In this document: positions 40,924-63,059 of the stretch, piece after piece
How the letters are laid out: each line of letters starts with the position of its first letter
Position numbering within the stretch: position 1 is the first letter of the stretch
Assembly (NCBI RefSeq): GCF_032444005.1
Contig: NC_091288.1
Location: forward strand, 217,186,001 to 217,250,000
DNA from: Ranitomeya imitator
Lineage: Eukaryota
Direction of reading: 5' to 3'
DNA: 64,000 bases
Notes under the pieces: model-generated
Seen by the model: the letters and a program-made list of their open reading frames with translations, nothing else
Told to the model about the DNA's origin: nothing
Database searches by the model: none
Position numbers and translations under genes: made by a program

Positions 40924-41384
40924 CACCTCCGTGTACAGAGAACCACCACCCCCATCATCCATTGTGCAGCTCTTTATTTGCAGGTTTGCTACGGCCAGAG
41001 TCAGCAGTCGGTGCCACATTGCCATCTGCCACAAGTTCTGTGCCACGCCGATGCCTCACCCATTACTGACCAATCACATACCGGCTCCTCCCACAAGAGG
41101 GCGACACTTTATATCCCCGACTCCCGATAATAAAGATCTTTTCAGATTCTGCGCAGTTCTTGTGGTGTCCACCAGGAGGCGATGAGGAACGTTCCATTGA
41201 ATCACTGGATTTTATCACTGCGGATTTTATTACTTGTTTTCCCACGAAGTCACATGATGAAATTAGCATAAAAGCAGTTGACTTCACTTATCTGACTACA
41301 ACTTATCACAGAGCAGCATTCTATGATATAACCGAGCCGGAGTTCCCCTTTAAGTGTGGTATTATGTCCAGAGGTCTCCCGGGG

Positions 41385-43689: not shown

Positions 43690-45662
43690 TGAATATTTTG
43701 TCTTAAAAAGATGTGTAAATGACAGAACTGCTGTATGTAAAAGCTCATGTTAAAATCGCACTGCACTCGCCGAGCACTCGTCCGTTTTTCTTTCTCGCAG
43801 ATGGGTATAAGCCCTTTGCACTGCAGCTCTGCTCCATTAGGACTCAGCTATGATCAGTGACCCGGGAGTGTAATCTCCAGCGTCCTCCATGCTTTACACT
43901 GCAGCTCTGCCTGCTGGAGAGCGGATTTCTATTACACGCAGTGCCGGCAAATGACCAGCAGCTGTCACTGCTCAGAGCCCCCAAAATCATTAAAGGGGAA
44001 GTGCACCTTCTGGGACAGATCCATTTGTGCAGTGAAGGAGGGGTGATCCCTGGTAACATCCATGGCCTCATCCATCTCCAGTGACACTGGAGACCCTTAG
44101 ATCAGTGCTGAGGAGGGGGATCTGTGGGGGAGGAGGGGGATCTATGGGGAGGAGGGGGATCTATGGGGAGGAGGGGGATCTATGGGGGAGGAGGGGATCT
44201 ATGGGGGAGGAGGGGGATCTATGGGGGAGGAGGGGATCTATGGGGAGGAGGGGGATCTATGAGGGAGGAGGGGATCTATGGGGGAGGAGGGGATCTATGG
44301 GGGAGGAGGGGGATCTATGGGGGAGGAGGAGATCTATGGGGGAGGAGGGGATTTATGGGGGAGGAGGGGGACCTATGGGGGAGGAGGGGATTTATGGGGG
44401 AGGAGGGGGATCTATGGGGGAGGAGGGGATCTATGGGGAGGAGGGGGATCTATGGGGAGGAGGGGGATCTATGGGGGAGGAGGGGGATCTATGGGGGAGG
44501 AGGGGGATCTATGGGGAGGAGGGGGATCTATGAGGGAGGAGGGGATCTATGTGGGAGGAGGGGGATTTATGGGGGAGGAGGGGGATCTATGTGGGAGGAG
44601 GGGGATCTATGGGGGAGGAGGGGGATTTATGGGGGAGGAGGGGATTTATGTGGGAGGAGGGGGATCTATGTGGGAGGAGGGGGATTTATGGGGGAGGAGG
44701 GGGATCTATGTGGGAGGAGGGGATTTATGGGGGAGGAGGGGGATCTATGTGGGAGGAGGGGGATCTATGGGGGAGGAGGGGATCTATGGGGGAGGAGGGG
44801 ATTTATGTGGGAGGAGGGGGATCTATGTGGGAGGAGGGGGATTTATGGGGGAGGAGGGGATTTATGTGGGAGGAGGGGGATCTATGTGGGAGGAGGGGAT
44901 CTATGGGGAGGAGGGGGATCTATGGGGAGGAGGGGGATCTATGGGGGAGGAGGGGGATCTATGGGGGAGGAGGGGGATCTATGGGGAGGAGGGGGATCTA
45001 TGAGGGAGGAGGGGATCTATGTGGGAGGAGGGGGATTTATGGGGGAGGAGGGGGATTTATGGGGGAGGAGGGGGATCTATGTGGGAGGAGGGGGATCTAT
45101 GGGGGAGGAGGGGGATTTATGGGGGAGGAGGGGGATCTATGTGGGAGGAGGGGATCTATGGGGAGGAGGGGGATCTATGGGGAGGAGGGGGATCTATGGG
45201 GGAGGAGGGGATCTATGGGGAGGAGGGGGATCTATGGGGGAGGAGGGGATCTATGGGGAGGAGGGGATCTATGGGGAGGAGGGGGATCTATGAGGGAGGA
45301 GGGGATCTATGTGGGAGGAGGGGATCTATGGGGAGGAGGGGGATCTATGGGGAGGAGGGGTATCTATGGGGGAGGAGGGGATCTATGGGGGAGGAGGGGG
45401 ATCTATGGGGGAGGAGGGGATCTATGGGGAGGAGGGGGATCTATGAGGGAGGAGGGGATCTATGTGGGAGGAGGGGGATCTATGGGGGGCGGGGGTCTCT
45501 GCCCTTCTCCCATTATGAATCACCCTGAAGTGCCTGATAACAGGGAGCAATAGATTGTAACCGCAGCTCATGGGAAAATTACAAGTGCAAGGGTCCTGTC
45601 TCTTTAAGAGGAGTAGGGTAGTGAGGCGCTGCAGCAGCTCCGGTCTCTTACTTGCTCTCCAT
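41385..45662 (-). CDS. ADPRH: ADP-ribosylarginine hydrolase (ARH1-like), 8 coding exons, 359 aa
   Basis: Exons 45662-45652 (ATGGAGAGCAA|gtaag), 43049-42823, 42739-42641, 42427-42322, 42249-42170, 42096-41913, 41838-41624, 41542-41385; 1080 nt, phases consistent. Motifs [87 protein letters not shown]. Exact orthologue versus paralogue not resolved. Confidence 0.85.
43222..43814. mobile_element. MITE in ADPRH intron 1, containing an (AT)n microsatellite
   Basis: Imperfect TIRs ggctcatactcatttgtgagacatacggacgag / ctcgtccgtttttctttctcgcagatgggtataagcc; (AT)n at about 43630-43681. Confidence 0.55.
44110..45490. repeat. G-rich 19-20-bp minisatellite (ggggatctatgggggaggag)n in ADPRH intron 1
   Basis: Two G-runs per unit, about 70 units; explains Gly/Glu-rich ORFs 44081-45553. 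Confidence 0.95.
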
Positions 45663-45898
45663 GTTGTGTCCTGTGCTGCGCAGCAAACTTCTTCCCAGAA
45701 TCCCCCCTCTCCTGTCCTAGAGTCATGTGACCTGCATGTCCTCGGTGTAACCCCGTCACTGCCGGGGCTCAGCGCATTCCGTGTCTATTTCTGGGCACTC
45801 AGCCACCGGGGAGGTCAAAGTTCACCCGTCTACTTATTAACCGGGTGTATACAGGACGCCGGGGTCACGCGGGGCGACGACCAATGAGGGGCAACGAC

Positions 45899-48442
45899 CT
45901 GCTGGTGCAGTGTCTACAGGGCGTGCTCTGCAGTGCTGCACTGTGTGAGGTGTAGTGTGCATGTGTCGCCCCCTGCTGGTGCAGTGTCTACAGGGCGTGC
46001 TCTGCAGTGCTGCACTGTGTGAGGTGTAGTGTGCATGTGTCGCCCCCTGCTGGTGCAGTGTCTGTACAGGGCGTGCTCTGCAGTGCTGCACTGTGTGAGA
46101 TGTGTGCATGTGTCGCCCCCTGCTGGTGCAGTGTCTGTACAGGGCGTGCTCTGCAGTGCTGCACTGTGTGAGGTGTAGTGTGGATGTGTCGCCCCCTGCT
46201 GGTGCAGTGTCTACAGGGCGTGCTCTGCAGTGCTGCACTGTGTGAGGTGTAGTGTGCATGTGTCGCCCCCTGCTGGTGCAGTGTCTGTACAGGGCGTGCT
46301 CTGCAGTGCTGCACTGTGTGAGGTGTAGTGTGGATGTGTCGCCCCCTGCTGGTGCAGTGTCTACAGGGCGTGCTCTGCAGTGCTGCACTGTGTGAGGTGT
46401 AGTGTGGATGTGTCGCCCCCTGCTGGTGCAGTGTCTGTACAGGGCGTGCTCTGCAGTGCTGCACTGTGTGAGGTGTAGTGTGGATGTGTCGCCCCCTGCT
46501 GGTGCAGTGTCTACAGGGCGTGCTCTGCAGTGCTGCACTGTGTGAGGTGTAGTGTGGATGTGTCGCCCCCTGCTGGTGCAGTGTCTGTACAGGGCGTGCT
46601 CTGCAGTGCTGCACTGTGTGAGGTGTAGTGTGCATGTGTCGCCCCCTGCTGGTGCAGTGTCTGTACAGGGCGTGCTCTGCAGTGCTGCACTGTGTGAGAT
46701 GTAGTGTGGATGTGTCGCCCCCTGCTGGTGCAGTGTCTGTACAGGGCGTGCTCTGCAGTGCTGCACTGTGTGAGGTGTAGTGTGGATGTGTCGCCCCCTG
46801 CTGGTGCAGTGTCTGTACAGGGCGTGCTCTGCAGTGCTGCACTGTGTGAGGTGTAGTGTGGATGTGTCGCCCCCTGCTGGTGCAGTGTCTGTACAGGGCG
46901 TGCTCTGCAGTGCTGCACTGTGTGAGGTGTAGTGTGGATGTGTCGCCCCCTGCTGGTGCAGTGTCTGTACGGGGCGTGCTCTGCAGTGCTGCACTGTGTG
47001 AGGTGTAGTGTGGATGTGTCGCCCCCTGCTGGTGCAGTGTCTACAGGGCGTGCTCTGCAGTGCTGCACTGTGTGAGATGTAGTGTGCATGTGTCGCCCCC
47101 TGCTGGTGCAGTGTCTGTACAGGGCGTGCTCTGCAGTGCTGCACTGTGTGAGATGTAGTGTGCATGTGTCGCCCCCTGCTGGTGCAGTGTCTGTACAGGG
47201 CGTGCTCTGCAGTGCTGCACTGTGTGAGATGTAGTGTGCATGTGTCGCCCCCTGCTGGTGCAGTGTCTGTACAGGGCGTGCTCTGCAGTGCTGCACTGTG
47301 TGAGATGTGTGCATGTGTCGCCCCCTGCTGGTGCAGTGTCTGTACAGGGCGTGCTCTGCAGTGCTGCACTGTGTGAGGTGTAGTGTGCATGTGTCGCCCC
47401 CTGCTGGTGCAGTGTCTGTACAGGGCGTGCTCTGCAGTGCTGCACTGTGTGAGATGTGTGCATGTGTCGCCCCCTGCTGGTGCAGTGTCTGTACAGGGCG
47501 TGCTCTGCAGTGCTGCACTGTGTGAGGTGTAGTGTGGATGTGTCGCCCCCTGCTGGTGCAGTGTCTACAGGGCGTGCTCTGCAGTGCTGCACTGTGTGAG
47601 GTGTAGTGTGCATGTGTCGCCCCCTGCTGGTGCAGTGTCTGTACAGGGCGTGCTCTGCAGTGCTGCACTGTGTGAGGTGTAGTGTGCATGTGTCGCCCCC
47701 TGCTGGTGCAGTGTCTGTACAGGGCGTGCTCTGCAGTGCTGCACTGTGTGAGGTGTAGTGTGCATGTGTCGCCCCCTGCTGGTGCAGTGTCTGTACAGGG
47801 CGTGCTCTGCAGTGCTGCACTGTGTGAGGTGTAGTGTGGATGTGTCGCCCCCTGCTGGTGCAGTGTCTACAGGGCGTGCTCTGCAGTGCTGCACTGTGTG
47901 AGGTGTAGTGTGCATGTGTCGCCCCCTGCTGGTGCAGTGTCTACAGGGCGTGCTCTGCAGTGCTGCACTGTGTGAGGTGTAGTGTGGATGTGTCGCCCCC
48001 TGCTGGTGCAGTGTCTACAGGGCGTGCTCTGCAGTGCTGCACTGTGTGAGGTGTAGTGTGCATGTGTCGCCCCCTGCTGGTGCAGTGTCTGTACAGGGCG
48101 TGCTCTGCAGTGCTGCACTGTGTGAGGTGTAGTGTGGATGTGTCGCCCCCTGCTGGTGCAGTGTCTGTACAGGGCGTGCTCTGCAGTGCTGCACTGTGTG
48201 AGGTGTAGTGTGGATGTGTCGCCCCCTGCTGGTGCAGTGTCTACAGGGCGTGCTCTGCAGTGCTGCACTGTGTGAGGTGTAGTGTGCATGTGTCGCCCCC
48301 TGCTGGTGCAGTGTCTGTACAGGGCGTGCTCTGCAGTGCTGCACTGTGTGAGGTGTAGTGTGCATGTGTCGCCCCCTGCTGGTGCAGTGTCTGTACAGGG
48401 CGTGCTCTGCAGTGCTGCACTGTGTGAGGTGTAGTGTGCATG
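45899..48442. repeat. 71-76-bp satellite, each unit with a CTCF-consensus motif on the minus strand
   Basis: Unit ctgctggtgcagtgtctgtacagggcgtgctctgcagtgctgcactgtgtgaggtgtagtgtgcatgtgtcgcccc; about 34 copies; gtcgccccctgctggtgc equals GCACCAGCAGGGGGCGAC on minus. Confidence 0.95.
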
Positions 48443-48525
48443 TGTAAGGAGGTGGCCGGGACCCTCGTGTGCTTCCTCTCTCCTGAACACTGTTCACGTG
48501 TGTCAGTGCGGCATCCTGACAGTTA

Positions 48526-49241
48526 AGGCACCTTCACACATAACGATATCGTTGCAATGTCAAATTTTTTGTGACGTAGCAACGATCCCGCTAACGATCT
48601 CGTTATGTGTGACAGCGACCAACGATCAGGCCCCTGCTGGGAGATCGTTGGTCGTTGGGGAATGATCAGGACTTTTTTTGGCCGCTGATCACCCGCTGTC
48701 ATCCCACACGCCGTTCCAGCGATGTCTTCACTGGTAACCAGGGTAAACATCGGGTTACTAAGCGCAGGGCCGCACTTAGTAACCCGATGTTTACCCTGGT
48801 TACTGTTGTAAATGTAAAAAAAAAACCAGTACATACTTACATTCCGGTGTCTGGTCACGTCCCTCGCCGTCAGCTTCCTGCACTGACTGAGCGCCGGCCG
48901 TAAAGCACAGCGGTGACGTCACCGCTGTGCTCTGCTTTACGGCGGCCGGCGCTGACAGTCAGTGCGGGAAGCTGAAGGCGAGGGACATGACAGACACCGG
49001 AATGTAAGTATGTACTGGTTTTTTTTTTACATTTACAACAGTAACCAGGGTAAACATCGGGTTACTAAGCGCGGCCCTGCGCTTAGTAACCCGATGTTTA
49101 CCCTGGTTACCCGGGGACTTCGGCATCGTTGGTCGCTGGAGAGCTGTCTGTGTGACAGCTCTCCAGCGACCAAACAGCGACGCTGCAGCAATCGACATCG
49201 TTGTCGGTATCACTGCAGCGTCGCTTAGTGTGACAGTACCT
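48526..49241. mobile_element. MITE with TTA TSD in the 5' LTR; internal palindromes
   Basis: Ends aggcaccttcacac / gtgtgacagtacct; tta at 48523-48525 and 49242-49244; the paralogous LTR has the empty site gacagTTAttc. Confidence 0.85.
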
Positions 49242-52046
49242 TTATTTAGGCACAGGAGAGCCTTGTTTTGTCATGTCAGACACCGGGCAGTCTGCCAAGG
49301 GGTACAACACATACAGTGAGACCGTTACAGGCTGTGGGGGATAAGTCTGCAGATGGCAGTAAGGGGCCCCCGGCCTAAGAATAGTGCAGTCGGGCACCAG
49401 ATCAACAGGACCATCTCCAAGAAGGATCCAGGGTCTACGACTGTGGCGGGAGCAGCTGAGATGGCGTTCCCAGCACCTTTCCCTATTGGAATCAGACAAG
49501 GGGCTGACAGGGAGCTGGTGATGCTGAAGGTACAGATGGGACACGAACTGTCCAAAGATGCTGCCCGGAGGAAAGGAAAGCGCAGACAGGACAGAGTCTG
49601 GCTACAGGGACGGCCATGAATGCGGAGAGAAATGACAGAGATACTAGAGACTGACCGTATGGCAGAGGAAGGGAAAGTGCAGGAAACGTTGTCCGGTGTG
49701 AACTGTGCTGCTGATGTGAAGAATGCAGATAAGACGATGTCTGTGTGTGAACTGTGCCGTCTGTGAGATGAATGCGCTGCTGTCTAGTAAAGTTAAGCTG
49801 CTGGAAAAAGACCTCGTCTCTGAGGTGATTTGCGGAGCTCATGAATGCGGAGCCGGCATGGCAGCAGCTGAGGGGAATCTGACACAGCCTGTGAGTGTGC
49901 TGTGGGGCATGCAGCACAAGGGACTTTATTTATCTTTTCATGTACAAGGTGCCGGGGTGCTCACTGACTGTTGCTTAGTGAACTCGCCCATGACTACCAC
50001 CCCGTGCCACCTTGTTACCCTTGGAGTAGTCGGCAGGATCGAATCCAGAAGCCTTGCAGCTACAGAGCTGGTGGAAAAGATTCCTGGAACTTTGAAGGTG
50101 ACAGCCGTGAAAGAGTTAAAGATGGCGGCTGATAGTGACTTTAAGATGGGGCCGAACGCTGGCAAGGAGACAGCGGTCAGTGGCACAAAAATGGAGGGTG
50201 GTGCCGCTTTTCGTGGGCGTTCTGGAAAGAAATTGGCACCAAAAGGAAGGAGGCTCTGGGCTGAGTCGAGGCCACATCCCACTGTGACTGATGCCCGCCC
50301 GAAATGGGTGTGGGCGAAGAAGCTTCAGCCTTTCCAACAGAGTGTGAAGAAACGGGTGGAGCAGCCAGAAGTGAGTCGGGAGGAGCCCAGAACGGCAGGA
50401 TGGCATGTCCGGAAGAGAGACGCCATTGCCAAGTGAGATACCTGTCCGGATGCAGCGGCGGAGTATGTAATTCGGAGGAGGAATCTGCCCGCCAGAAGAA
50501 GTGATCAAGAAACCAGAAGTCATGGAGAGAGGGACCGTCGCGGCCGTAATCTCAAGTTCGCGCGGCCGCAGAGGAGGACCGTCGCAGCTGACTGCAGTTG
50601 CCGTGAGTTTGACACCGGCCCTCACCCCAGTCCCCGCATCTCCCCACGGCGGCCACCTAGATGAGTCCTGGGCCCCAATAGCGAGAGAGGGTCGGTGGGT
50701 GAAGGAAGTTATAAAAGAAACGGCAGGAGCACCGAATTTTAAAGGAGCTGCAGCAGCCAGGAGGAAGCATGTCCGGCTGGATGACACGTGGCTCCTACAG
50801 AAAGCTGGAGGAACAGTAATGAGTCGTCCTCCAGTGGGTCTTTGGGACACAGTGCGGCCCACTATTCCGGCCGCAAGGAGTGAGGGTGGCCCCTTTAAGA
50901 AGAAAGTGTTAGGCCAGCTGCACCAAAATATGTGAGACTGTTCAGCGTCTCTGGAAGGACAGTGAGCCATGGATGATACCAGGACTGAGTGTCAGTGGTG
51001 ACCCGAATGGTCACGGATAAGACTGCTGCTTTTGTTTTTCCCCTTCCTCATCCAAGTTTCATTTGCGCATCCCCTGCTGGATTACAGAACTGGAACCCTG
51101 AAAGGGTTAATCACCATGGACTGAGGGTGCGGTTGCTTTAAGGACTGTGTTGTTTTAACACTACATCTTACCTGCATTTGCCCCAAATTTTACCTGTCTT
51201 AACCTTGAACTGTTCCTTGATAAAGCCACCCACGTGTGTTTAAGGGCCTGTGATCTGCTAAAAGGAGAGAGGGGGAAAGAGCCTGTGCAGGAAGACCCGA
51301 GGAGCGAGCCGGGTCAGTACTGACTGGACTGCTGAGGTGGCCAACAGGCCATGTGTTTTAAGAGGCTTCCAGTTTTTGGCTACCTGGAGTGGGAAAGAAC
51401 TGGTCCATGGGCCCGAATGGTTGTGCGATACTGTATGTGTCTGAATCCCTGGAGCAATGGGACTGGGGTCAGTCGGACCCAAGTTAAAAGAGACTTGAAC
51501 TTTCTGTTCCAGGGCTCCAACCGAGTGCAGCCGGGGTAACGGTTGACCCACAAGATAAAGACTGTCCTAATTGTATATACGTTTAAAAAAAAATTCTAAC
51601 AGTATTAAGTTTACAGGTGCCGCCATGGTCGGGGACGACCATATTTTAGAAGAGAGGAGTGTAAGGAGGTGGCAGGGACCCTCGTGTGCTTCCTCTCTCC
51701 TGAACACGGAGCACGTGTGTCACATGTGGCATCCTGACAGTTATTCATGTTCACTAATGCTAATGTAATGTGCGGTTCCCTAAGGATCATTAATGTGTCA
51801 TGTATTCTAATGTGATGCATTTGTTGTATACTGTGTGTAAGCTTAGGGATAGTATAGGACCATAGGGGGATTAGAATAGAGGGGGCACATTAGAGATAGA
51901 GAATAGGATAGATAAGAGTATTAGTTTAGGAACAGGCAACAAGCAGAGCAGCACAGAGCAGGGAGATATAGGATAGGCACTTCCTGGTTCTGTCAGACAC
52001 CCTGGCAGTCTGACCAAGAGGCCGAATGCAAACAGTGAGACAGTTA

Positions 52047-52264
52047 GGGTATGTGTCCACGTTCAGGATTGCATCAGGATTTGGTCAGGATTTTATGTCA
52101 GTATTTGTAAGCCAAAACCAGGAGTGGCTGATAAAAAACAGAAGTGGTGCATATGTTTCTATTATACTTTTCCTCTAATTGTTCCACTCCTGGTTTTGGC
52201 TTACAAATACTGACATAAAACCCTGACCAAATCCTGATGCAATCCTGAACGTGGACACATACCC
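52047..52264. mobile_element. Near-perfectly palindromic MITE with TTA TSD in the 3' LTR
   Basis: gggtatgtgtccacgttcaggattgcatcagg... / ...cctgatgcaatcctgaacgtggacacataccc; tta at 52044-52046 and 52265-52267; empty site gagaccgTTAcagg in the other LTR. Confidence 0.9.
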
Positions 52265-53169
52265 TTACAGGCTGTGGGGGATAAGTCTGCAGATGGCAGT
52301 AAGGGGCCCCCGGCTGAAGAATAGTGCAGTCAGGCACCAGCTCAACAGGATCATCTCCAAGAAGGATCTGGACCGGGGAGGGAGCAGCTGAGATGGCGTT
52401 CCTGGCACCTTTCCCTATTGGAATCGGACAAGGAGCTGACAGAGAGCTGGTGATGCTGAAGCTACAGATGGGACACGAACTGTCCAAAGAGGCTGCCCAG
52501 ATGTCAGAGGAAAGGAAAGCGCAGACAGGACAGAGTCTGGCTAGAGGTACGGCCATGAATGCGGAGAGAAATGACAGAGATACTAGAGTCTGCCCATATG
52601 GCAGAGGAAGGGAAAGTGCAGGAAACGTTGTCCTGTGTGAACTGTGTTGCTGATGTGAAGAATGCAGATAAGATGTCTCTGTGTGTGAACTGTGCCGTCT
52701 GTGAGATGAATACGCTGCTGTCTAGTAAAGTTAAGCTGTTGGAAAAACCTCAAGTGATTTGCGGAGCTCATGAATGCGGAGCCGACATGGCAGCAGCTGA
52801 GGGGAATCTGACAGAGCCTGTGAGTGTGCTGTGGGGCTGCACATGCAGCACAAGGAACTTTATGTATCTTTTCATGTACAAGGTACCACCCCGTGCCACC
52901 TTGTTACACATGTCACCCCCTGCTGGTGCAGTGTCTTGCTCTGCAGTTTAGGGGCATCCGTCTATAACACTCCCAAATCATTATTTTCACCAAACTTTGC
53001 GACAGATTTTATAAAATGCCTTCTTATTATAGCTCCTGAGACAGCGAAGATAAGTGCCCCCTCCATGCAGTAACACAGTTTATATGAGGTTGTCAGCTCC
53101 GCTCTCCACCATAGAACAGAGTCCAGTCAGAGTCCTGGGATTTCTCCTCCATCTTTGGCGCAGGCAGTC

Positions 53170-56100
53170 TCAGCTTCGGCGCAGGAGGCGATGTCTCAGC
53201 TCCCGGCGCAGGAGGTCTCTCTCCTTCCGGATTCCCTGGAGGACGCTCTGGTTCTCCTGCGCTCGTCTCACCAGATACGGAAGCACCGAGTCCACCGAAC
53301 CGTAAGGGATGGACTTATAGACCAGATACCCAGCCTGACCTGAGGACGAGAGCGGCACATCAGCCCCCCGAGACGTACCACCAGATATACCGCGAGCATC
53401 TGCTCCGAGGAAAGACACCCGCACCAACCTACCGAGCGTGAGAGACACGTGGTCACACATCCCGAGGAGCTGCCCGAAGCACACGGCACCGCTGCTCCCA
53501 CCGATCCCGAGCTCCGCCATCCTGGGAGAGCAGAAAACCTGTATCCAATAGTATCCTGTGTGATACCGTCTGCTGAGCTGTGTATCTAATCCTCTCCTGT
53601 GTGATACTGTCTGCTGAGCCGTGTATCTAATCCTATCCTGTGTGATACTGTCTGCTGAGCCGTGTATCTAATCCTATCCTGTGTGATACTGTCTGCTGAG
53701 CCGTGTATCTAATCCTCTCCTGTGTGATACTGACTGCTGAGCCGTGTATCTAATCCTATCCTGTGTGATACTGACTGCTGAACCGTGTATCTAATCCTAT
53801 CCTGTGTGATACTGTCTGCTGAGCCGTGTATCTAATCCTCTCCTTTGTGATACTGACTGCTGAGCCGTGTATATAATCCTCTCCTTTGTGATACTGACTG
53901 CTGAGCCGTGTATCTAATCCTATCCTGTGTGATACTGTCTGCTGAGCCGTGTATCTAATCCTCTCCTGTGTGATACTGTCTGCTGAGCCGTGTATCTAAT
54001 CCCATCCTGTGTGATACTGTCTGCTGAGCCGTGTATCTAATCCTCTCCTGTGTGATACTGACTGCTGAGCTGTGTATCTAATCCTCTCCTGTGTGATACT
54101 GTCTGCTGAGCCGTGTATCTAATCCTATCCTGTGTGATACTGTCTGCTGAGCCGTGTATCTAATCCTCTCCTGTGTGATACTGACTGCTGAGCCGTGTAT
54201 CTAATCCTCTCCTGTGTGATACTGTCTGCTGAGCCGTGTATCTAATCCTCTCCTGTGTGATACTGACTGCTGAGCCGTGTATCTAATCCTCTCCTGTGTG
54301 ATACTGACTGCTGAGCTGTGTATCTAATCCTCTCCTGTGTGATACTGTCTGCTGAGCTGTGTATCTAATCCTATCCTGTGTGATACTGTCTGCTGAGCCG
54401 TGTATCTAATCCCATCCTGTGTGATACTGACTGCTGAGCCGTGTATCTCAGCCCTGTGGTACCCACCTCTGCGCAGCGTGCAGCACGGACTCCTCGTTGT
54501 GGCTGGCGATGATCAGGTTGTGTTTCGCTCCGTCCCGTGCGATCCGCTCCAGCAGGTGATCCAGTGATCGCTGGTAACTGGGGGTCAGAGGTCGGGTTTT
54601 TATTCCGCAGTGATACAATGTATCATTCCGCAGCCCTGATCTCACTGACACACTGTGCCGGCCCCTCAGCGGTGCCCGGTCTCGCCCCGTTTTCCTCACC
54701 TTCTGTTGGTGGCCGCCCAGTCGGGCTGGACGGGGTCGCTGTAACCCTTCTCTTTCGCCATTTTCCGCTCCTTGTCCATATACGCCCCGCGGACCAACTT
54801 CACCCCAAAACTCCGGCCCAGACTGTCGGCCGTGCGCAGGTCCTGGGTCAGGTTCTTGTAGGAATCCTCCATGATGGAAAAACAAAGCAGAAAGGTGAGT
54901 AGCGGCCCGTCCAAGAGGGCGTCACCCACATAACTTCACCCCTCGCACGACCACTTAAAGGTACGCGGCCCCTTCTCCAAGATGGCGGAGACCACCGACT
55001 GCCGTGTCTCCATGGCGACCGTCTCACCTTTAAGTAGCACTGATAGGTGTTCCAGATCCAGGGCTCGTCCGTGTTGCACTGGGCCATCATCGCCATGGTA
55101 ACCAGGCTGAGCGCGGGGTTCACGTACGTGTATTCAGCATCCACCAGGACACGGACGCGCTTCGCCTTGGCGTGCTGCGGGGAGATCAGAGGCAGTGTAC
55201 TGTACAGCAGGCTGGGCCGCGGGTAGTCACCCAGACAGGAGCCAGGTGGTTGCTAGGCAACACCGCCCATTCGCCGTCGTCCTCACCTTCCCGACGCGGC
55301 TGAGCCTCCGCACCGCGGTCTGGAGATGCCGATTCTGCTCCTCGGACAGGAAGGGAAGAACCGGATCCTGCGAGAACAAGTGTCAGAACATTGTGCCAAT
55401 ATGGCCGAAAAACGGAACCGGCCCCCCCGTACCTGGCCCTCCATGATGGAGACGATCCGCTGAGGACTGAGCGCCGCCCGCCGATCCGGATCTGACAGAC
55501 ACACGGACAGAACCTTCTGATGACGGGAGGGAAGAAGAGGAGACGTCATGACTGGGTCTGATGGTTGTCGCTTCCCCTCCCCCGCTCACCCCGGCTTTAT
55601 ATCGCACTCACGCACAGGTCGGCGCTCATCAGGGCCGTGATTTTCAGCTGCATCATGGGACGGTCCCCTCCAGCCGAGGAGAGGTCCACACACTTCAGCA
55701 TGATCTCCTCGTTCTGCTGGTACCAGCGCTCCCTGCGAAATGATGCGGGAAATACGGAGCAAAGCGTTTCTAGAAGATTGTGTGCAGTACCGAGCATGGC
55801 CTGCAGGTGGCACTGCTCCTACTCAATAGTAACAGAAGTGACATCTGCTGGCAGGAACTGGTACTGCAGCGCAAACTATCTAAAAAAACATCTTTTTGTT
55901 TTGTTTTCGTTCTCATCTGTAGAGATGTAAATTCTGGCTCCAATGTAAAATCTAGAACAAGACCCCTGATCACCATTCAAACACTCTTAAAGCCAATGTG
56001 TCATCAGATTAAGCACTATTGGTCATTATTTTATGGTCTTTAAGAGAGGGTGTGGCTCACAGGATCCTTTCGGGTGTGTCCATGGGCTGATTTGCATAAT

Positions 56101-58652
56101 TGTGCTCTGAGCCACGCCCCCATGGAAAACACCATAAAGAGTAACACCAAATAAAATGGCCCTTATCTCTGGAACCAAATTGCAAATTAAAAGAAAAGAA
56201 AAAATGGAAAAAAATCAAGGGAACGGCATAAATAAGAGAAAAAAACTGGGAAACTTTATTACCTTTTTTTTTCTATCACAATCTGCATAAAAAAAAAGAA
56301 GAAAATGTTGCATTTTTCACATTGACCCCTCATTCTTTTTTTAGTCTCTTCCTTCCTTTTGCTCCAGGAAATTCACATGTACATTAGAAGCAATGAACAG
56401 ACTCTGCACACGCGCATTAGATGCTTCGATATGTAAGATAGCGTTAAAGGTCATGGTGAAGGGAGGAGGAGGTGAGCTGTGACATCACCAAGTGTGAATG
56501 CTGTGCTATCTGCTGTATATAGAGGTGTCATCAGTGTAATCCTGCCTCTGCTGATAATGAAGCTGCAGTAAAATCATCCTGAATTACAAGAAGGAGGAGT
56601 ATAACAGAGTTCCCAGTGTCAAAAGTGCAAGATTGCTAATGTATCAATAATCTGATTTAAATAGGAGGTAATTCTGGACCCTGCGGCCCTGGCTCTGCAC
56701 CCCTATAGCTCCGTCCCTGGCTCTGCACCCCTATAGCTCCGTCCCTGGCTCTGCACCCCTATAGCTCCGTCCCTGGCTCTGCACCCCTATAGCTCCGTCC
56801 CTGGCTCTGCACCCCTATAGCTCCGTCCCTGGCTCTGCACCCCTACAGCTCCGTCCCCGGCTCTGCACCCCTATAGCTCCGTCCCCGGCTCTGCACCCCT
56901 ATAGCTCCGTCCCCGGCTCTACACCCCTATAGCTCCGTCCCCGGCTCTGCACCCCTATAGCTCCGTCCCCGGCTCTGCACCCCTATAGCTCCGTCCCCGG
57001 CTCTGCACCCCTATAGCTCCGTCCCCGGCTCTGCACCCCTATAGCTCCGTCCCCGGCTCTGCAGCCCTATAGCTCCGTCCCTGGCTCTGCACCCCTACAG
57101 CTCCGTTCCTGGCTCTGCACCCCTACAGCTCCGTCCCTGGCTCTGCACCCCTACAGCTCCATCCGCGGCTCTGCACCCCTATAGATCCGTCCCTGGCTCT
57201 GCACCCCTATAGCTCCGTCCCCGGCTCTGCAGCCCTATAGCTCCGTCCCTGGCTCTGCACCCCTACAGCTCCATCCGCGGCTCTGCACCCCTATAGATCC
57301 GTCCCTGGCTCTGCACCCCTATAGATCCGTCCCTGGCTCTGCACCCCTATAGCTCTGTCTCTGTCTCTGCACCCCTACAGCTCCGTCCCTGGCTCTGCAC
57401 CCCTATAGCTCCGTCCCTGGCTCTGCACCCCTATAGCTCCGTCCCTGGCTCTGTACCCCTATAGATCCGTCCCTGGCTCTGCACCCCTACAGCTCCATCC
57501 GCGGCTCTGCACCCCTATAGCTCCGTCCCTGGCTCTGCACCCCTGTAGCTCCGTCCCTGGCTCTGCACCCCTATAGCTGTGTCTGGAGCGCAGACATTAC
57601 ACAGAATATCTTGGCTGCAGTACCACTTTTGCACTGCAGGTGGCAGTTTCCATTGTTAATAACACTGGTGACATCTGCTGGCAGTTGCTGGTAATGCAAC
57701 CTAGAATATATAATTTTCAATGTAATATTTTCCATAATGAAGTGTAGACATTGGGGTAAAGTGAGGCTTGATGCAAAATAAATAACGGGCCCCACCATTT
57801 ATATTATTGGGGTCTATAATCCAGCAAACATAAGCAACTGCTTCCACTGGCAGGAGGGTAGTGGAGTCATTCATACTGTTTCCACTCGCACATTAGGAAG
57901 GCATGACAAAAATGCCACGTGAAATATGTTGCAGTGCCCCCTACTGGTCAGGGTATTATCATGGCTCCCAGCTCACCCGCTTTTGCTTTCGCCCAAGTCC
58001 TCTTCGATGGGCACCGCCAACATGGGGCGAATGCCGAGCCGCGCCAGCCGCTCCGTACAGGCCTGAATCTCAGGGAGGGTCTCTCCGGCAACAAACTGGC
58101 CGTACACCGAGCCCCTCATGCCCCATTCAAAGAGTCTGCGGCCCAGGAGCCTGCGGGACACCGAGAGAAGCTGCCGGAGAGAAGGAAGAATAATGGAATC
58201 TAGAAATAGCCTGGTCTGATACATTGTAACAAATCTCAGCAGCGAGCGCAGGACGCGCTGCGGACGGTTGTTACATTGTACGTCTGGGGAGAATCTGCTA
58301 CAACTGTAACAGACCCTCAGCTGTGCGCACAGGCCGGGATCATTCTGCCCAGTCAGGACAATCTCTCACAGAGGATCGTTTAGCCTGAATACATTGTAGC
58401 GAACCCTCAGCTGTCAGCAGTAACGTTTTCGTCGCTTACCTTGTCGGAGTTCCTCACCAGGGTGGGCACCGAGCAGAGCCGGAATATGAGCAGCCCCCGC
58501 GCCACCTCCCAGCCGCTCTTCAGCCTGAAGGCCTTTCCATCCGAAAAACTGAGCTCCGGTCCCGGCCCGTGAGCGAATGCCCTCCAGGACCAAGTCCAGA
58601 CCGGGGGCAAGAGCCGCGACCCAGAACGCAGGCGGCGGCCGAAGCGCCACAT
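53170..58652 (-). CDS. PRODH2: Hydroxyproline dehydrogenase (proline dehydrogenase 2), 10 coding exons, 458 aa
   Basis: Exons 58652-58440, 58170-57977, 55732-55612, 55516-55433, 55367-55287, 55174-55028, 54866-54700, 54577-54467, 53521-53433, 53339-53170; 1377 nt, phases consistent. Motifs SVYGQFVAGET, MQLKITAL, VLVDAEYTYVNPAL, WNTYQCYLK, FGVKLVRGAYMDKER, ASHNEESV, FGQLLGMCDHVSL, VYKSIPYGS, PYLVRRAQEN. Confidence 0.93.
53553..54448. repeat. 41-bp satellite filling PRODH2 intron 8
   Basis: Unit ctgctgagccgtgtatctaatcctctcctgtgtgatactgt; spacing 53581 to 53622; about 22 copies. Confidence 0.95.
56688..57578. repeat. 28-bp minisatellite in PRODH2 intron 2
   Basis: Unit ctatagctccgtccctggctctgcaccc; spacing 56703 to 56731; about 32 copies. 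Confidence 0.95.
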
Positions 58653-58848
58653 GATGAGTGCACCTGGCGGACTGCAGCGAGCGCGGGGGGCAGTCAGCGA
58701 CCAATGACCGTGGGACGGCGGCAGCTGTGTACATAGGTGATGTCCCCACCGCAGGGGATGACGGGGTTAATACACAGCCTGTATGTATATAGGGACGGGA
58801 CACTTATTAACCCATTGCTGAACGTATCACCAGCAGCCGACCCGCGCA

Positions 58849-61579
58849 GGGGGCAATGTAATAAAGGTCAGCCATGGCCTGGGATGACACCGCCGAGCAA
58901 TGCCCACATCCACCACCAGGGGGCAATGTAATAAAGGTCAGCCATGGCCTAGGATGACACCGCGGGGCAATGCCCACATCCACCACCAGGGGGCAATGTA
59001 ATAAAGGCCAACCATGGCCTAGGATGACACCGCGGGGCAATGCCCACATCCACCACCAGGGGGCAATGTAATAAAGGTCAGCCATGGCCTAGGATGACAC
59101 CGCGGGGCAGTGCCCACATCCACCACCAGGGGGCAATGTAATAAAGGTCAGCCATGGCCTAGGATGACACCGCGGGGCAATGCCCACATCCACCACCAGG
59201 GGGCAATGTAATAAAGGTCAACCATGGCCTAGGATGACACCGCGGGGCAATGCCCACATCCACCACCAGGGGGCAATGTAATAAAGGTCAGCCATGGCCT
59301 AGGATGACACCGCGGGGCAGTGCCCACATCCACCACCAGGGGGCAATGTAATAAAGGTCAGCCATGGCCTGGGATGACACCGCGGAGCAATGCCCACATC
59401 CACCACCAGGGGGCAATGTAATAAAGGTCAGCCATGGCCTAGGATGACACCGCGGGGCAGTGCCCACATCCACCACCAGGGGGCAATGTAATAAGGGTCA
59501 GCCATGGCCTAGGATGACACCGCGGGGCAGTGCCCACATCCACCACCAGGGGGCAATGTAATAAAGGTCAGCCATGGCCTAGGATGACACCGCGGGGCAG
59601 TGCCCACATCCACCACCAGGGGGCAATGTAATAAAGGTCAGCCATGGCCTGGGATGACACCGCGGAGCAGTGCCCACATCCACCACCAGGGCGCAATGTA
59701 ATAAAGGTCAGCCATGGCCTGGGATGACACCGCGGAGCAGTGCCCACATCCACCACCAGGGGGCAATGTAATAAAGGTCACCCATGGCCTAGGATGACAC
59801 CGCGGAGCAATGCCCACATCCACCACCAGGGCGCAATGTAATAAAGGTCAGCCATGGCCTGGGATGACACCGCGGAGCAATGCCCACATCCACCACCAGG
59901 GGGCAATGTAATAAAGGTCACCCATGGCCTGGGATGACACCGCGGGGCAATGCCCACATCCACCACCAGGGGGCAATGTAATAAAGGTCAGCCATGGCCT
60001 GGGATGACACCGCGGAGCAATGTCCACATCCACCACCAGGGGGCAATGTAATAAAAGTCACCCATGGCCTGGGATGACACCGCGGGGCAATGCCCACATC
60101 CACCACCAGGGGGCAATGTAATAAAGGTCACCCATGGCCTGGGAGGACACCGCGGAGCAATGTTCACATTCACCACCAGGGGGCAATGTAATAAAGGTCA
60201 CACGGCCAGGGATGACACCGCGGGGCAATGCCCACATCCACCACCAGGGGGCAATGTAATAAAGGTCACATACGGCCTGGGATGACACCGCGGGGCAATG
60301 CCCACATCCACCACCAAGGGGCAATGTAATAAAGGTCACTCATGGCCTGGGATGACACCGCGGAGTAGTGCCCACATCCACCACCAGGGGGCAATGTAAT
60401 AATGGTCAGCCATGGCCTGGGATGACACCGCGGAGCAATGCCCACATCCACCACCAGGGGGCAATGTAATAAAGGTCACCCATGGCCTGGGATGACACCG
60501 CGGGGCAATGCCCACATCCACCACCAGGGGGCAATGTAATAAAGGTCAGCCATGGCCTGGGATGACACCGCGGAGCAATGTCCACATCCACCACCAGGGG
60601 GCAATGTAATAAAAGTCACCCATGGCCTGGGATGACACCGCGGGGCAATGCCCACATCCACCACCAGGGGGCAATGTAATAAAGGTCACCCATGGCCTGG
60701 GAGGACACCGCGGAGCAATGTTCACATTCACCACCAGGGGGCAATGTAATAAAGGTCACACGGCCAGGGATGACACCGCGGGGCAATGCCCACATCCACC
60801 ACCAGGGGGCAATGTAATAAAGGTCACATACGGCCTGGGATGACACCGCGGGGCAATGCCCACATCCACCACCAAGGGGCAATGTAATAAAGGTCACTCA
60901 TGGCCTGGGATGACACCGCGGAGTAGTGCCCACATCCACCACCAGGGGGCAATGTAATAATGGTCAGCCATGGCCTGGGATGACACCGCGGAGCAATGCC
61001 CACATCCACCACCAGGGCGCAATGTAATAAAGGTCAGCCATGGCCTGGGATGACACCGCGGAGCAATGCCCACATCCACCACCAGGGGGCAATGTAATAA
61101 AGGTCACCCATGGCCTAGGATGACACCGCGGAGCAATGCCCACATCCACCACCAGGGCGCAATGTAATAAAGGTCAGCCATGGCCTGGGATGACACCGCG
61201 GAGCAATGCCCACATCCACCACCAGGGGGCAATGTAATAAAGGTCACACGGCCAGGGATGACACCGCGGGGCAATGCCCACATCCACCACCAGGGGGCAA
61301 TGTAATAAAGGTCACATACGGCCTGGGATGACACCGCGGGGCAATGCCCACATCCACCACCAAGGGGCAATGTAATAAAGGTCACTCATGGCCTGGGATG
61401 ACACCGCGGAGTAGTGCCCACATCCACCACCAGGGGGCAATGTAATAAAGGTCAGCCATGGCCTGGGATGACACCGCGGGGCAATGCCCACATCCACCAC
61501 CAGGGGGCAATGTAATAAAGGTCACCCATGGCCTGGGATGACACCGCGGAGCAGTGCCCACATCCACCACCAGGGGGCA
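58849..61579. repeat. 70-bp satellite, each unit with a CTCF-consensus motif on the plus strand
   Basis: Unit caccaccagggggcaatgtaataaaggtcagccatggcctaggatgacaccgcggggcaatgcccacatc; about 39 copies; the final unit ends CCACCAGGGGGCAGC. Confidence 0.95.
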
Positions 61580-62063
61580 GCAAAGGGGGAAATCTTCTCT
61601 ACAGACCACTATGCACAATATCGGGGGCTCGGCCCCCATTATCCAGGTGGAGCACAATGGTTCTCAGCAGGGACGGCGGTCTAAGGAACATTCCGGGTGA
61701 AGAGGATGCACTGGAGGGGCACGACGCAGGAACTGTAAAGAATCAGGCTCCGTCCCTGCAATTACTGAGCTCCACCACCAGAGGGAACCGCTGCACCCCA
61801 ACCTCCTCCTCTTAAAGAGCCCTTGTCCCAATTTTTTTTTTTTTTTTTTTTTTAAGCCTTGATTGATCTGTGGGAACGGTCGCATCTGTCCAGAGTCCAA
61901 ACCCGAGGATTTATGTCACGGAGCAGCAGCTGAAACAATTCTCACACGGTAAAGTTACAGTCCGCTGCTGGAGTGGCGGAGGATGGGGAATGTCCTAGGT
62001 GACCCGTCCCTTTAAGGTCATACAGAAAGTATACAGAGATGGCGCGGAGTTCGCTCCAATATC

Positions 62064-62069
62064 TTTATT
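62064..62069 (-). terminator. Likely EIF3C polyadenylation signal (AATAAA on minus)
   Basis: tttatt on + about 85 nt downstream of the EIF3C stop codon. Confidence 0.55.
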
Positions 62070-62151
62070 AAGAGACATGATGGCAACAAAGTACATAAAA
62101 ATGACAGACAGATGGGCGGCGATCCAGAGGTCCGGAGCCAGGCCGGACAGA

Positions 62152-63027
62152 TCAGTAGTTGTTCTGGTTCTGCTGGTCTCGCCGGTAGCCGCGCCGCATG
62201 TAGCCGCCCTCCTTCCTCTGGTACGAGTCTTTTTGGTCTGGAGAAATTAGAGAAAGAAGACGTAAGAGAAGATGGAGGCGCGATGACTCAACGTCACCAC
62301 CAGAGGGCGCCGCTGCACACACTTCCAGCCTCTCAGGGCATGCTGGGAGCTGTAGTTCTGCAGCAGCTGGAGAGCCACATGTGACCCCTGAAAGACTGCT
62401 CAGATAAGACAGGATGGAGACAAGCGGCATCAGATTGTGCGGTGCCGCTCATCTCCAAGATGAAGAAATGGTGACGAGATGCCAGCGCCCCACCTTCATC
62501 CCCACCCCCTGTTGCAAAACTACAACTCCCAGCAAGTCCTAACAGTTGCCGTCTGGGAGTTGTAGTTTGGCCACAGATTGGAAAGTGCTGCATTAGAGGG
62601 AACAGGAAGTGAGGTGTGCAGTGCAGTAAAGCTTCCCCGCCCTCAGGATGATGGATGTGGAAGAGAAGCCATCATGAGCAGAGAAGCCCCTGAACCAGTC
62701 GCCGTCCATCTGCTGCACAAGTACAACTCCCAGCATGCTCTGACACGCTGGGAGTAGTACTACTACAATAGCTGGAGAGCGGGAGGGATGAGGAGGGTTA
62801 ATGACGAGGTGACGGTGAGAGATGATGAGCAGGAGCCTGCAGCGCGCACAGCCGGCCTCACCGCGGTTGAAGTATCCCCCGTAGCTGCCCTGCTTGTGGT
62901 CGAAGATGCGCTCGTTGTTCTCCACCAGGTTCCCGAGCTTCTCCGCCAGCTGCAGAGCCGTGTTCTGGAGGGAACTGGGCTCCGTGCCGTGCATCACCAC
63001 CGTCTGGGTGGGCTGATCCAGGGAAGC
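62152..63027 (-). CDS. EIF3C: Eukaryotic translation initiation factor 3 subunit C, last two coding exons (gene continues beyond the window)
   Basis: Exon 63027-62862: [55 protein letters not shown]; exon 62237-62152: [32 protein letters not shown], phases match; matches the eIF3c C-terminus. Confidence 0.92.
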
Positions 63028-63059
63028 CTGCGGGGGAGAATGGGGGCCGTCAGAAAGGA

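What the first reader, a model, noticed from the sequence alone, without database searches (positions are those of the whole stretch)
45899..61579. Candidate system: independently amplified, divergently oriented CTCF arrays bracketing PRODH2
Seen: two arrays share nothing but the CTCF core, both are promoter-adjacent, the left one points left and the right one points right, and they enclose PRODH2 and an LTR element in about 10 kb. Known: divergent CTCF clusters mark domain boundaries. Inference: repeated tandem amplification of promoter-proximal CTCF sites may build strong boundaries in repeat-laden frog genomes and shield compact gene clusters. This is the most novel-looking signal in the window, but it rests on motif matches only.
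Basis: inference. Interest (0 to 1): 0.72.

Follow-up and report, generated by a model that had tools for sequence, protein, structure and literature searches.

The report
Two CTCF-motif minisatellites flanking PRODH2
Two unrelated tandem repeats, each carrying about 35 same-direction matches to the CTCF binding motif, fill the gaps between three neighbouring frog genes and end at the starts of ADPRH and PRODH2. They are real and old, and are most likely ordinary repeat expansions of single pre-existing sites; whether they bind CTCF or insulate anything is untested.

Summary
Both arrays are real. Array 1 runs 45898-48442 (76-bp unit, about 34 copies) and array 2 runs 58847-61579 (70-bp unit, about 39 copies). 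Each unit holds one near-consensus CTCF-type site, on the minus strand in array 1 and the plus strand in array 2. The two units share only the 14-base core. None of the 13 other tandem arrays in the window has such a site.

New here:
- All three genes lie on the minus strand, and each array fills an intergenic spacer.
- Spliced RNA contigs put the PRODH2 transcript start at the edge of array 2.
- Array 2 sits at the same junction in one related species, and its units occur in two, at a depth fitting tens of copies rather than a genome-wide satellite.
- An old LTR retrotransposon sits inside the last unit of array 1, so that array predates it.

No data show CTCF binding or insulation. The divergent orientation is a 1-in-4 outcome. 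The motif is not measurably more conserved than the rest of the unit.

The likeliest reading is minisatellite expansion of single intergenic CTCF sites, with any barrier effect a by-product. The scan has already noted many other CTCF-motif arrays elsewhere in this genome (for example s1-312563, s1-288135, s1-307380).

The parts
45898..48442 (-). Array 1: about 34 units of 76 bp (variants of 74 and 73 bp). Each unit has one CTCF-type site on the minus strand. The array ends 235 bp upstream of the predicted ADPRH start codon.
   Evidence: TRF; unit lengths; 33 identical 17.5-bit hits; the last motif at the ADPRH-side end is truncated.
48443..52908 (+). LTR retrotransposon inserted into the last unit of array 1. 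5' LTR 48443 to about 50019; primer-binding site 50022-50046; polypurine tract 51648-51659; 3' LTR 51660-52908; 4-bp target duplication CATG at 48439-48442 and 52909-52912.
   Evidence: Direct repeats and BLAST between the two LTR copies show 90-92% identity. Junction sequences were read. The internal ORFs have no Pfam domain.
52909..52947 (-). Severed remainder of the last array-1 unit. It carries a weakened CTCF-type site (14.1 bits; the CpG in the core has changed to TpG on the motif strand). It lies just downstream of the PRODH2 3' end.
   Evidence: 26-base match at 96% to the unit, plus an adjacent 11-base match; motif hit at 52911; sequence read.
52990..58863 (-). PRODH2-like gene. Start codon 58650-58652; exon 1 from 58440 to about 58825-58863; intron 1 58171-58439; exon 2 57976-58170; stop codon 53170-53172. 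Two introns hold minisatellites (53540-54448 and 56687-57578).
   Evidence: Pfam Pro_dh on two exons. A spliced joint with GT..AG on the minus strand appears in two RNA runs. C-terminal exon and stop codon.
58847..61579 (+). Array 2: about 39 units of 70 bp, each with one CTCF-type site on the plus strand. Its proximal edge coincides with the PRODH2 transcript start.
   Evidence: TRF; 35 hits of 10 bits or more. RNA contigs stop at 58825-58863 and none lie beyond 58900. The array sits at the same junction in the DNA of one related species, and units occur in two.
61564..61582 (+). Terminal site at the far end of array 2 and the best-scoring site of the array (21.5 bits). It runs into unique flank and is a candidate ancestral single site.
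   Evidence: a single 21.5-bit hit; sequence read.
45652..45897 (-). ADPRH promoter region and predicted first coding exon. Start codon 45660-45662; splice donor right after 45652; exon 2 starts at 43049. CpG observed/expected is 0.63.
   Evidence: Sequence read. Pfam ADP_ribosyl_GH on downstream exons. CpG counts. No RNA evidence was obtained for this gene.
62040..63036 (-). 3' end of an unidentified minus-strand gene. Last coding exon ends at 62155, stop codon 62152-62154, AATAAA signal at 62064-62069. Array 2 therefore lies between a gene's tail and the PRODH2 start.
   Evidence: Open frames and sequence. No Pfam or Atlas match, so the gene call is only probable.

Best explanation
These are two independent, locus-specific minisatellites. 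Each probably grew by tandem duplication and unequal exchange from a short intergenic segment that already held one strong CTCF-type site. Three genes lie head-to-tail on the minus strand: an unnamed gene, then PRODH2, then ADPRH. Each of the two spacers between them is now almost entirely array.

Shown:
- the arrays, their motifs and their orientation;
- that the units are unrelated to each other;
- the position of array 2 at the PRODH2 transcript start;
- array 2 at the same junction in one related species, and its units in two;
- array 1 being older than an LTR insertion whose LTRs differ by 8-10%.

Inferred:
- Frog CTCF, which uses the vertebrate motif, can occupy many of these roughly 70 sites.
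- Array 1 would then stall cohesin arriving from the left and array 2 cohesin arriving from the right.
- That would keep PRODH2 apart from both neighbouring regulatory domains.
- I take this barrier effect to be a by-product of a mutational process, not something the arrays were built for.
For: - Array statistics and motif scores.
- Chance figures.
- Unit independence and absence of dispersed relatives.
- Age of array 1: the LTR element has a target-site duplication, primer-binding site and polypurine tract, and it splits one unit.
- RNA joints and contig ends at the edge of array 2.
- In DNA run X5, array-unit contigs have word depth 25-116 against 5-12 for the unique flank, and one contig crosses the flank/array junction.
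- 32% of the window is tandem repeat, in 15 arrays.
- Frog extended subtelomeres expand minisatellites through recombination (PMC10794172).
- In the human germline, short insertions at bound CTCF sites are often tandem duplications that add motif copies, and clusters may arise neutrally (PMC8559717).
- A mouse IgH site differing from the array 1 core at one of 14 positions binds CTCF in gel shifts, and about 77% of such sites are occupied in vivo (PMC6746451).
- X. tropicalis domain borders show oriented CTCF motifs and depend on CTCF and Rad21 (PMC8270788).
Against: - There is no binding, methylation or contact data for this frog.
- Array depth from contigs is only an order-of-magnitude guide; the tool itself warns it is not a copy number.
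- Array 1 was not examined in any sequencing run, so its locus-specificity rests on this window alone.
- The enrichment over random seeding (P 0.003-0.009) could also mean that motif-bearing arrays are preferentially formed or kept. That would favour the rivals.
- The ancestral single-site state is inferred from array ends, not seen in an outgroup.
Confidence: 0.5

Rival explanations
1. Selected boundary. The arrays were amplified or retained because many co-oriented CTCF sites make a stronger directional barrier. The divergent pair would then form a domain boundary that shields PRODH2 and its neighbours from each other.
For: - Two of 15 arrays carry the motif, against 0.09-0.14 expected from random seeding.
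- Both arrays occupy gene-to-gene spacers and abut transcript starts.
- Array 2 is kept at the same junction in one related species and its units occur in two.
- All 33 array 1 motifs keep their CpG, whereas the severed copy lost it.
- Orientation-dependent action of a CTCF tandem array is known for Dxz4 (PMC5899087).
- The scan's notes list other promoter-side arrays in this genome. These are unchecked leads.
Against: - The motif is not significantly more conserved than the rest of the unit.
- Homogeneity is what concerted evolution gives any minisatellite.
- The orientation pattern has a 1-in-4 prior.
- The window was chosen after the fact.
- Thirteen motif-free arrays sit in comparable positions, including one between ADPRH and the next gene.
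Confidence: 0.15
2. Inert repeats. The motifs are never or rarely occupied because the arrays are methylated or heterochromatic, as DXZ4 is on the active X. The arrays would then have no architectural role.
For: - CpG observed/expected is only 0.31-0.37 in both arrays, against 0.63-0.83 in the adjoining promoter flanks. That fits germline methylation of the arrays.
- Neither array has an upstream TGCAGTACC element at the spacing seen beside the four CTCF-type cores of the hairpin repeats in the PRODH2 introns. Its reading as the CTCF upstream motif is from my memory.
- No RNA or open-chromatin evidence was found over the arrays.
Against: - The cores match the consensus at 13 of 14 positions, and one is nearly identical to sites bound in vitro and in vivo in mouse.
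- Array 2's core has no CpG. Array 1's only CpG is at a position that, from my memory of structural work, matters little for binding.
- Both arrays touch CpG-rich active promoters.
Confidence: 0.25
3. Promoter modules. The repeated unit is part of the core or proximal promoter. It would act on transcription of ADPRH and PRODH2 directly, for example through promoter-proximal CTCF tethering of enhancers or as a roadblock to read-through from the upstream gene, rather than as a domain boundary.
For: - The PRODH2 transcript contigs end within about 20 bp either side of the first unit.
- Each array 2 unit carries an A/T-rich TATA-like stretch next to the motif.
- Both spacers separate tandem genes, where read-through would hit the next promoter.
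- There is no RNA over 58900-59130 in the run that expresses PRODH2 strongly.
Against: - Contigs cannot fix a transcript start.
- The two arrays have opposite motif orientation relative to their genes.
- Only the first unit can be in the core promoter.
- Nothing shows the upstream gene is expressed in the sampled tissue.
Confidence: 0.1

Closest known systems
DXZ4 / Dxz4, FIRRE and ICCE tandem repeats of the mammalian X chromosome (PMC6985041, PMC5899087, PMC3491370)
   Same: Head-to-tail arrays in which every unit carries a CTCF motif in one orientation. For Dxz4, inverting the array changes which side it contacts.
   Different: - Those units are hundreds to thousands of bases long, and binding is shown and specific to the inactive X.
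- Here the units are 70-76 bp and the arrays are only 2.5-2.7 kb.
- These arrays sit at gene starts, and binding is untested.
Co-oriented CTCF sites of the immunoglobulin heavy-chain V region (PMC6746451)
   Same: More than 100 same-direction sites are spread by duplication of the DNA that carries them. The mouse sub-consensus differs from the array 1 core at one of 14 positions, and such sites bind CTCF.
   Different: There the sites ride on duplicated gene segments kilobases apart, not on a minisatellite, and they serve V(D)J locus contraction.
Homotypic CTCF site clusters made by tandem duplication at germline-bound sites (PMC8559717, which cites Kentepozidou 2020 on clustered CTCF at domain borders)
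   Same: A bound site is a hot spot for short tandem duplications that add further motif copies. Clusters can arise and persist without selection, and clusters are typical of boundaries.
   Different: Human clusters hold a few diverged sites. Here there are 34-39 nearly identical units, which needs a further expansion step such as unequal exchange.
Recombination-driven minisatellite expansion in frog extended subtelomeres (PMC10794172)
   Same: GC-rich DNA dense in tandem repeats, with arrays that arise repeatedly and differ between lineages.
   Different: That work does not single out CTCF-motif units. Whether this window is subtelomeric is unknown to me.
Transposon-borne CTCF motifs, including hairpin repeats of this genome noted by the scan (s1-288135, s1-294811)
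   Same: The window itself holds hairpin repeats with CTCF-type sites in both arms (37461/37529, 55797/55836, 57630/57666).
   Different: Neither array unit resembles these or any other dispersed sequence in the window. Array 2 has the depth of tens of copies, not thousands.

Membership tests
CTCF-binding tandem-repeat boundary element (DXZ4/Dxz4 type) | Tandem array with a CTCF motif in every unit, all in one orientation | tested here: met
   33 of about 34 units in array 1 and 35-38 of 39 units in array 2 carry the motif, on a single strand in each array.
CTCF-binding tandem-repeat boundary element (DXZ4/Dxz4 type) | CTCF occupancy in vivo | not testable with these tools
   No ChIP or CUT&RUN data for this frog were reachable. 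All 24 runs found were genomic or RNA contigs.
CTCF-binding tandem-repeat boundary element (DXZ4/Dxz4 type) | Insulation or long-range contacts anchored at the array | not testable with these tools
Ordinary minisatellite (VNTR) | Unit of about 10-100 bp, head-to-tail, highly homogeneous, GC-rich | tested here: met
   Units of 76 and 70 bp, 97% and 94% identity, 59-60% GC.
Ordinary minisatellite (VNTR) | Locus-specific rather than a genome-wide satellite | tested here: inconclusive
   Array 2: unit contigs are roughly 5-20 times the flank depth in a genomic run of a related species, and the junction is conserved.
Ordinary minisatellite (VNTR) | Copy-number polymorphism between individuals | not tested
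   This needs long reads from several individuals. Only collapsed contigs were available.
Transposon-derived CTCF-site expansion | Unit homologous to a dispersed mobile element | tested here: not met
   Short-word BLAST of both units against the window with the two arrays masked found only core-motif matches. Only 64 kb was searchable, so a source elsewhere in the genome is not excluded.
The abundant 57-bp CTCF-like satellite of this genome (scan notes s1-307380, s1-294943) | 57-bp unit present in at least hundreds of thousands of copies | tested here: not met
   The units are 70 and 76 bp, and array 2's depth fits tens of copies. I had no 57-bp unit sequence to compare directly.
Domain boundary marked by divergent CTCF sites | Sites on the two sides point away from each other | tested here: met
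   Array 1 is on the minus strand and array 2 on the plus strand. The strong single sites at 57666 and 57932 (minus) and 61772 and 62294 (plus) put the switch point at the PRODH2 start.
Domain boundary marked by divergent CTCF sites | Conservation of the sites across species | tested here: inconclusive
   Array 2's junction is conserved in one related species (about 2% diverged), and its units are present in that species and a second one (3-5% diverged). No distant outgroup could be examined.

The most novel reading that the evidence does not exclude
In this frog lineage, germline-bound CTCF sites are themselves hot spots for tandem duplication, and the recombination-prone, minisatellite-rich DNA then inflates them into arrays. 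On this reading each array is a footprint of an ancestral bound site, and array growth automatically yields dose-amplified, direction-specific cohesin barriers. Here they would isolate a tissue-specific gene from both neighbours. That would make boundary strength an evolvable, copy-number trait.
Probability: 0.15. Interest if true: 0.7.

Novelty: new member of a known kind. Interest (0 to 1): 0.4.

Why it matters
If the sites are occupied, this locus and its counterparts in related species give a natural series of CTCF-site number and orientation at defined gene borders. That series could test how barrier strength scales with site count, without engineering.

If the sites are not occupied, the locus is a warning. 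In repeat-rich genomes, motif counts alone would call dozens of false "super-boundaries".

Either way, the dating is useful. Array 1 is older than an LTR insertion, and array 2 is shared by related species, yet both remain 94-97% uniform. Such arrays therefore persist and are kept uniform over long periods.

Tried and rejected
1. Conservation of the motif within array 2. Motif columns vary less (0.47 against 1.9 variants per column), but the window ranks only 12th of 70, so this is not significant. Array 1 is too uniform to test.
2. Hidden homology of the two promoter flanks. Alignment showed none beyond two short shared motifs.
3. Kinship of array 1 with the 86-bp arrays. There is only a 19-base local match, 17 identical, which is weak.
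4. Transposon origin of either unit. No dispersed relatives were found in the window.
5. Rfam scan of 40000-64000. Nothing was found.
6. Naming the gene right of array 2. Pfam and the protein Atlas gave nothing.
7. Look-ups of both units by sequence in the scan's notes were blank. Per the operators, a blank there means nothing.
8. Literature searches found no paper on CTCF-motif minisatellites in frogs.
One reference had the wrong frame and was corrected.
One was a coordinate-finding script, which I replaced by reading the sequence. The other was a gapped pattern search for the upstream-plus-core motif, which I dropped.
11. I did not build a joined spliced protein. Exons were searched one by one by reference. 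PRODH2 as opposed to PRODH1 rests on my memory of the human proteins, not on a test.
Full report
WHAT IS THERE. Tandem Repeats Finder reports an array at 45898-48445 (period 76, 33.9 copies, 97% matches) and another at 58847-61579 (period 70, 39.1 copies, 94%). The window as a whole is unusually repeat-dense. Fifteen arrays cover 32% of it.

Array 1 has units of 76, 74 and 73 bp that alternate in a higher-order pattern. Array 2 has units of 70 bp, with a few of 68 bp.

THE MOTIF. To check it, I compared the array cores with the published consensus CCASYAGRKGGCRS quoted in PMC6746451. Both cores match 13 of 14 positions.
- Array 1 gives 33 identical hits of 17.5 bits, all on the minus strand.
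- Array 2 gives 35 hits of 10 bits or more, all on the plus strand, 32 of them at 19.4-21.5 bits.
- The other 13 arrays never exceed 7.4 bits.

The mouse IgH V-region sub-consensus, which binds CTCF in gel shifts and is about 77% occupied in vivo, differs from the array 1 core at one position.

IS IT CHANCE. Under a random-base model the per-position probability of 17.5 bits or more is 1.5e-6 at 60% GC. About 0.003 motif-bearing arrays would be expected among 15, so random sequence is excluded.

A fairer null is that array units are drawn from the local DNA, which is itself motif-dense. The local DNA has 12 sites of 15 bits or more in 43 kb of non-array sequence, against 0.3 expected. Under that null the expectation is 0.09-0.14 arrays, and P(two or more) is 0.003-0.009.

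The window was flagged after the fact among 755 scanned windows of this genome. This figure therefore does not by itself show preferential amplification of CTCF sites.

INDEPENDENCE. The two consensus units align only across the 14-base core, in opposite orientation. Neither unit has a relative in the rest of the window, apart from one severed array 1 unit described below.

GENES AND POSITIONS. All three genes lie on the minus strand. Pfam finds ADP_ribosyl_GH in exons at 41.4-43.1 kb and Pro_dh in exons at 54.7-55.25 kb.
- ADPRH: the predicted start codon is at 45660-45662, followed by a splice donor. An acceptor sits at 43049. Array 1 therefore ends 235 bp upstream of the start codon. I have no RNA evidence for this gene.
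- PRODH2: the start codon is at 58650-58652 and the stop codon at 53170-53172.
- Right of array 2: a probable minus-strand gene ends with a stop at 62152-62154 and an AATAAA signal at 62064-62069. I could not name it.

Each array thus fills the spacer between the tail of one gene and the head of the next.

READS. Of 24 public runs that share words with 57600-62100, I laid four on 57600-59130.

Two runs are evidently RNA: X1, which is nearly identical to the window, and X12, from a related species. Both show a joint that skips 58171-58439, with GT..AG on the minus strand. This defines exon 2 (57976-58170) and exon 1 (from 58440).
- The exon 1 contigs end at about 58825 (X12) and at 58863 (X1). 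The array begins at 58847.
- No RNA lies beyond 58900.
- Contigs cannot fix a start exactly, but the transcript start is within about 20 bp of the array edge.

Two runs are genomic, from related species: X5 (about 2% diverged) and X7 (about 3-5% diverged).
- Both cover the unique flank at word depth 5-12.
- In X5, one contig crosses the flank/array junction (58453-58875).
- In X5, array-unit contigs have depth 25-116.
- In X7, the long flank contig aligns only to 58840, and separate unit contigs (depth about 3-38) carry more differences.

The tool warns that such depths are not copy numbers. As an order of magnitude they fit tens of copies, not the hundreds of thousands reported by the scan for this genome's 57-bp satellite. 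The small runs of the third species hold only the spliced PRODH2 message, so they say nothing about the array.

AGE OF ARRAY 1. The segment 48443-52908 is an LTR retrotransposon. The evidence:
- Its LTRs begin at 48443 and 51660 and are 90-92% identical.
- A 25-base primer-binding site follows the 5' LTR at 50022.
- A polypurine tract precedes the 3' LTR at 51648-51659.
- The element is flanked by a CATG duplication.

To the left of the insertion point is a truncated array unit. To the right (52909-52947) is the continuation of that same unit, with its CTCF-type core weakened to 14.1 bits by a CpG-to-TpG change. Full units to the left span the insertion point. So at least two units existed before the element arrived, and before its LTRs diverged by 8-10%.

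Before that insertion, array 1 reached to within about 50 bp of the PRODH2 3' end.

CANDIDATE ANCESTRAL SITES. Array 2 ends at its far side in its best-scoring site (21.5 bits, 61564-61582), which runs into unique sequence. Together with the severed array 1 unit, this suggests that each array grew from a single intergenic site. That is an inference; no outgroup was available.

SELECTION OR DRIFT.
- In array 2 the motif columns carry fewer variants than the rest (0.47 against 1.9 per column), but 11 other circular windows do as well or better.
- CpG observed/expected is 0.31-0.37 in the arrays, against 0.63-0.83 in the promoter flanks. The arrays are therefore not CpG islands and may be methylated in the germline.
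- All 33 array 1 motifs keep their CpG while the isolated copy lost it. That could mean protection or simply homogenisation.

HOW IT WOULD WORK. In X. tropicalis the vertebrate CTCF motif shows convergent orientation at domain borders, and CTCF/Rad21 knock-down weakens domains (PMC8270788). From established loop-extrusion knowledge, a plus-strand site stalls cohesin coming from its right and a minus-strand site stalls cohesin coming from its left.
- Array 1 would therefore face leftward loops and array 2 rightward loops.
- The 10.4 kb between them, holding PRODH2 and the LTR element, would be closed to extrusion from both sides.
- The two arrays would not loop to each other.

Single strong sites refine the picture.
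- Minus-strand sites at 57666 and 57932, and plus-strand sites at 61772 and 62294, put the orientation switch at the PRODH2 start.
- Plus-strand sites at 41088, 41166 and 41941 face array 1 across ADPRH.

All of this is inference from motifs.

ORIGIN. Frog extended subtelomeres expand minisatellites by recombination (PMC10794172). In human spermatogonia, bound CTCF sites attract short insertions that are often tandem duplications adding motif copies. The authors argue that clusters can arise neutrally (PMC8559717). Loop anchors are also linked to germline recombination hot spots (PMC6066925).

These two processes together explain the arrays without invoking selection. This is why I rank the by-product reading first.

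COMPARISON AND VERDICT. The closest known systems are the X-linked CTCF tandem repeats (DXZ4/Dxz4, FIRRE, ICCE) and the co-oriented IgH V-region sites. The arrays here share the defining sequence features with these. They differ in scale (70-76-bp units), in position (at gene starts) and in lacking any binding evidence.

The scan's own notes list many further CTCF-motif arrays in this genome, which those notes call a poison frog. I treated them as leads only.

The boundary interpretation remains an untested, moderately plausible hypothesis.

Noticed in passing
window 45832-45842 and 58802-58812; 45878-45887 and 58698-58707: The ADPRH and PRODH2 promoter flanks share an exact 11-mer (GGTTAATAAGT, minus strand) and an exact 10-mer containing a CCAAT box. 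Each occurs only at these two places in the window. The order of the two motifs differs between the flanks, and the flanks are otherwise unalignable. They are possibly shared transcription-factor sites.
   Followed up: partly
window 55797-55854 and 57630-57684: Two small hairpin repeats in PRODH2 introns carry a CTCF-type core in each arm. Three of the four cores are preceded by TGCAGTACC and the fourth by a one-base variant of it. From memory, that element matches the CTCF upstream motif. The two hairpins flank the 28-bp minisatellite at 56687-57578. Another hairpin with two cores lies at 37461-37547.
   Followed up: partly
window 61772-61795 and 62294-62317: Two strong plus-strand CTCF-type sites (18.1 and 21.9 bits) share about 24 bases, including sequence 3' of the core. 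This suggests copies of one repeated element near the 3' end of the unnamed gene.
   Followed up: no
window 62521-62534, 62722-62735, 38391-38404 (also 62341, 3272 with one mismatch): A 14-mer occurs five times against 0.02 expected. It resembles, from memory, the ZNF143 (SBS, ACTACA-type) binding motif. It sits partly in inverted pairs, so it is probably a small repeat family carrying that motif.
   Followed up: partly
window 23725-25958 and 34122-36815: Two 86-bp arrays share a 19-base stretch (17 identical) with the array 1 unit. The stretch covers the first half of the CTCF core but lacks the G-rich half. This could be a distant common origin or coincidence.
   Followed up: partly
window 48733-49111: A nearly perfect palindrome lies inside the 5' LTR only: 121-base arms, 99% complementary, with a 137-base spacer. 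It is probably a later hairpin-transposon insertion. The 3' LTR has a different palindrome at 52038-52273.
   Followed up: no
window 58860-58868 and every array 2 unit: Each 70-bp unit holds an A/T-rich TATA-like stretch about 25-30 bp from where the PRODH2 RNA contigs end in the first unit. The unit may therefore be a copied piece of the core promoter.
   Followed up: no
window 27449-31102: A 1218-codon open frame on the minus strand looks like a retrotransposon polyprotein. It lies between the two 86-bp arrays.
   Followed up: no
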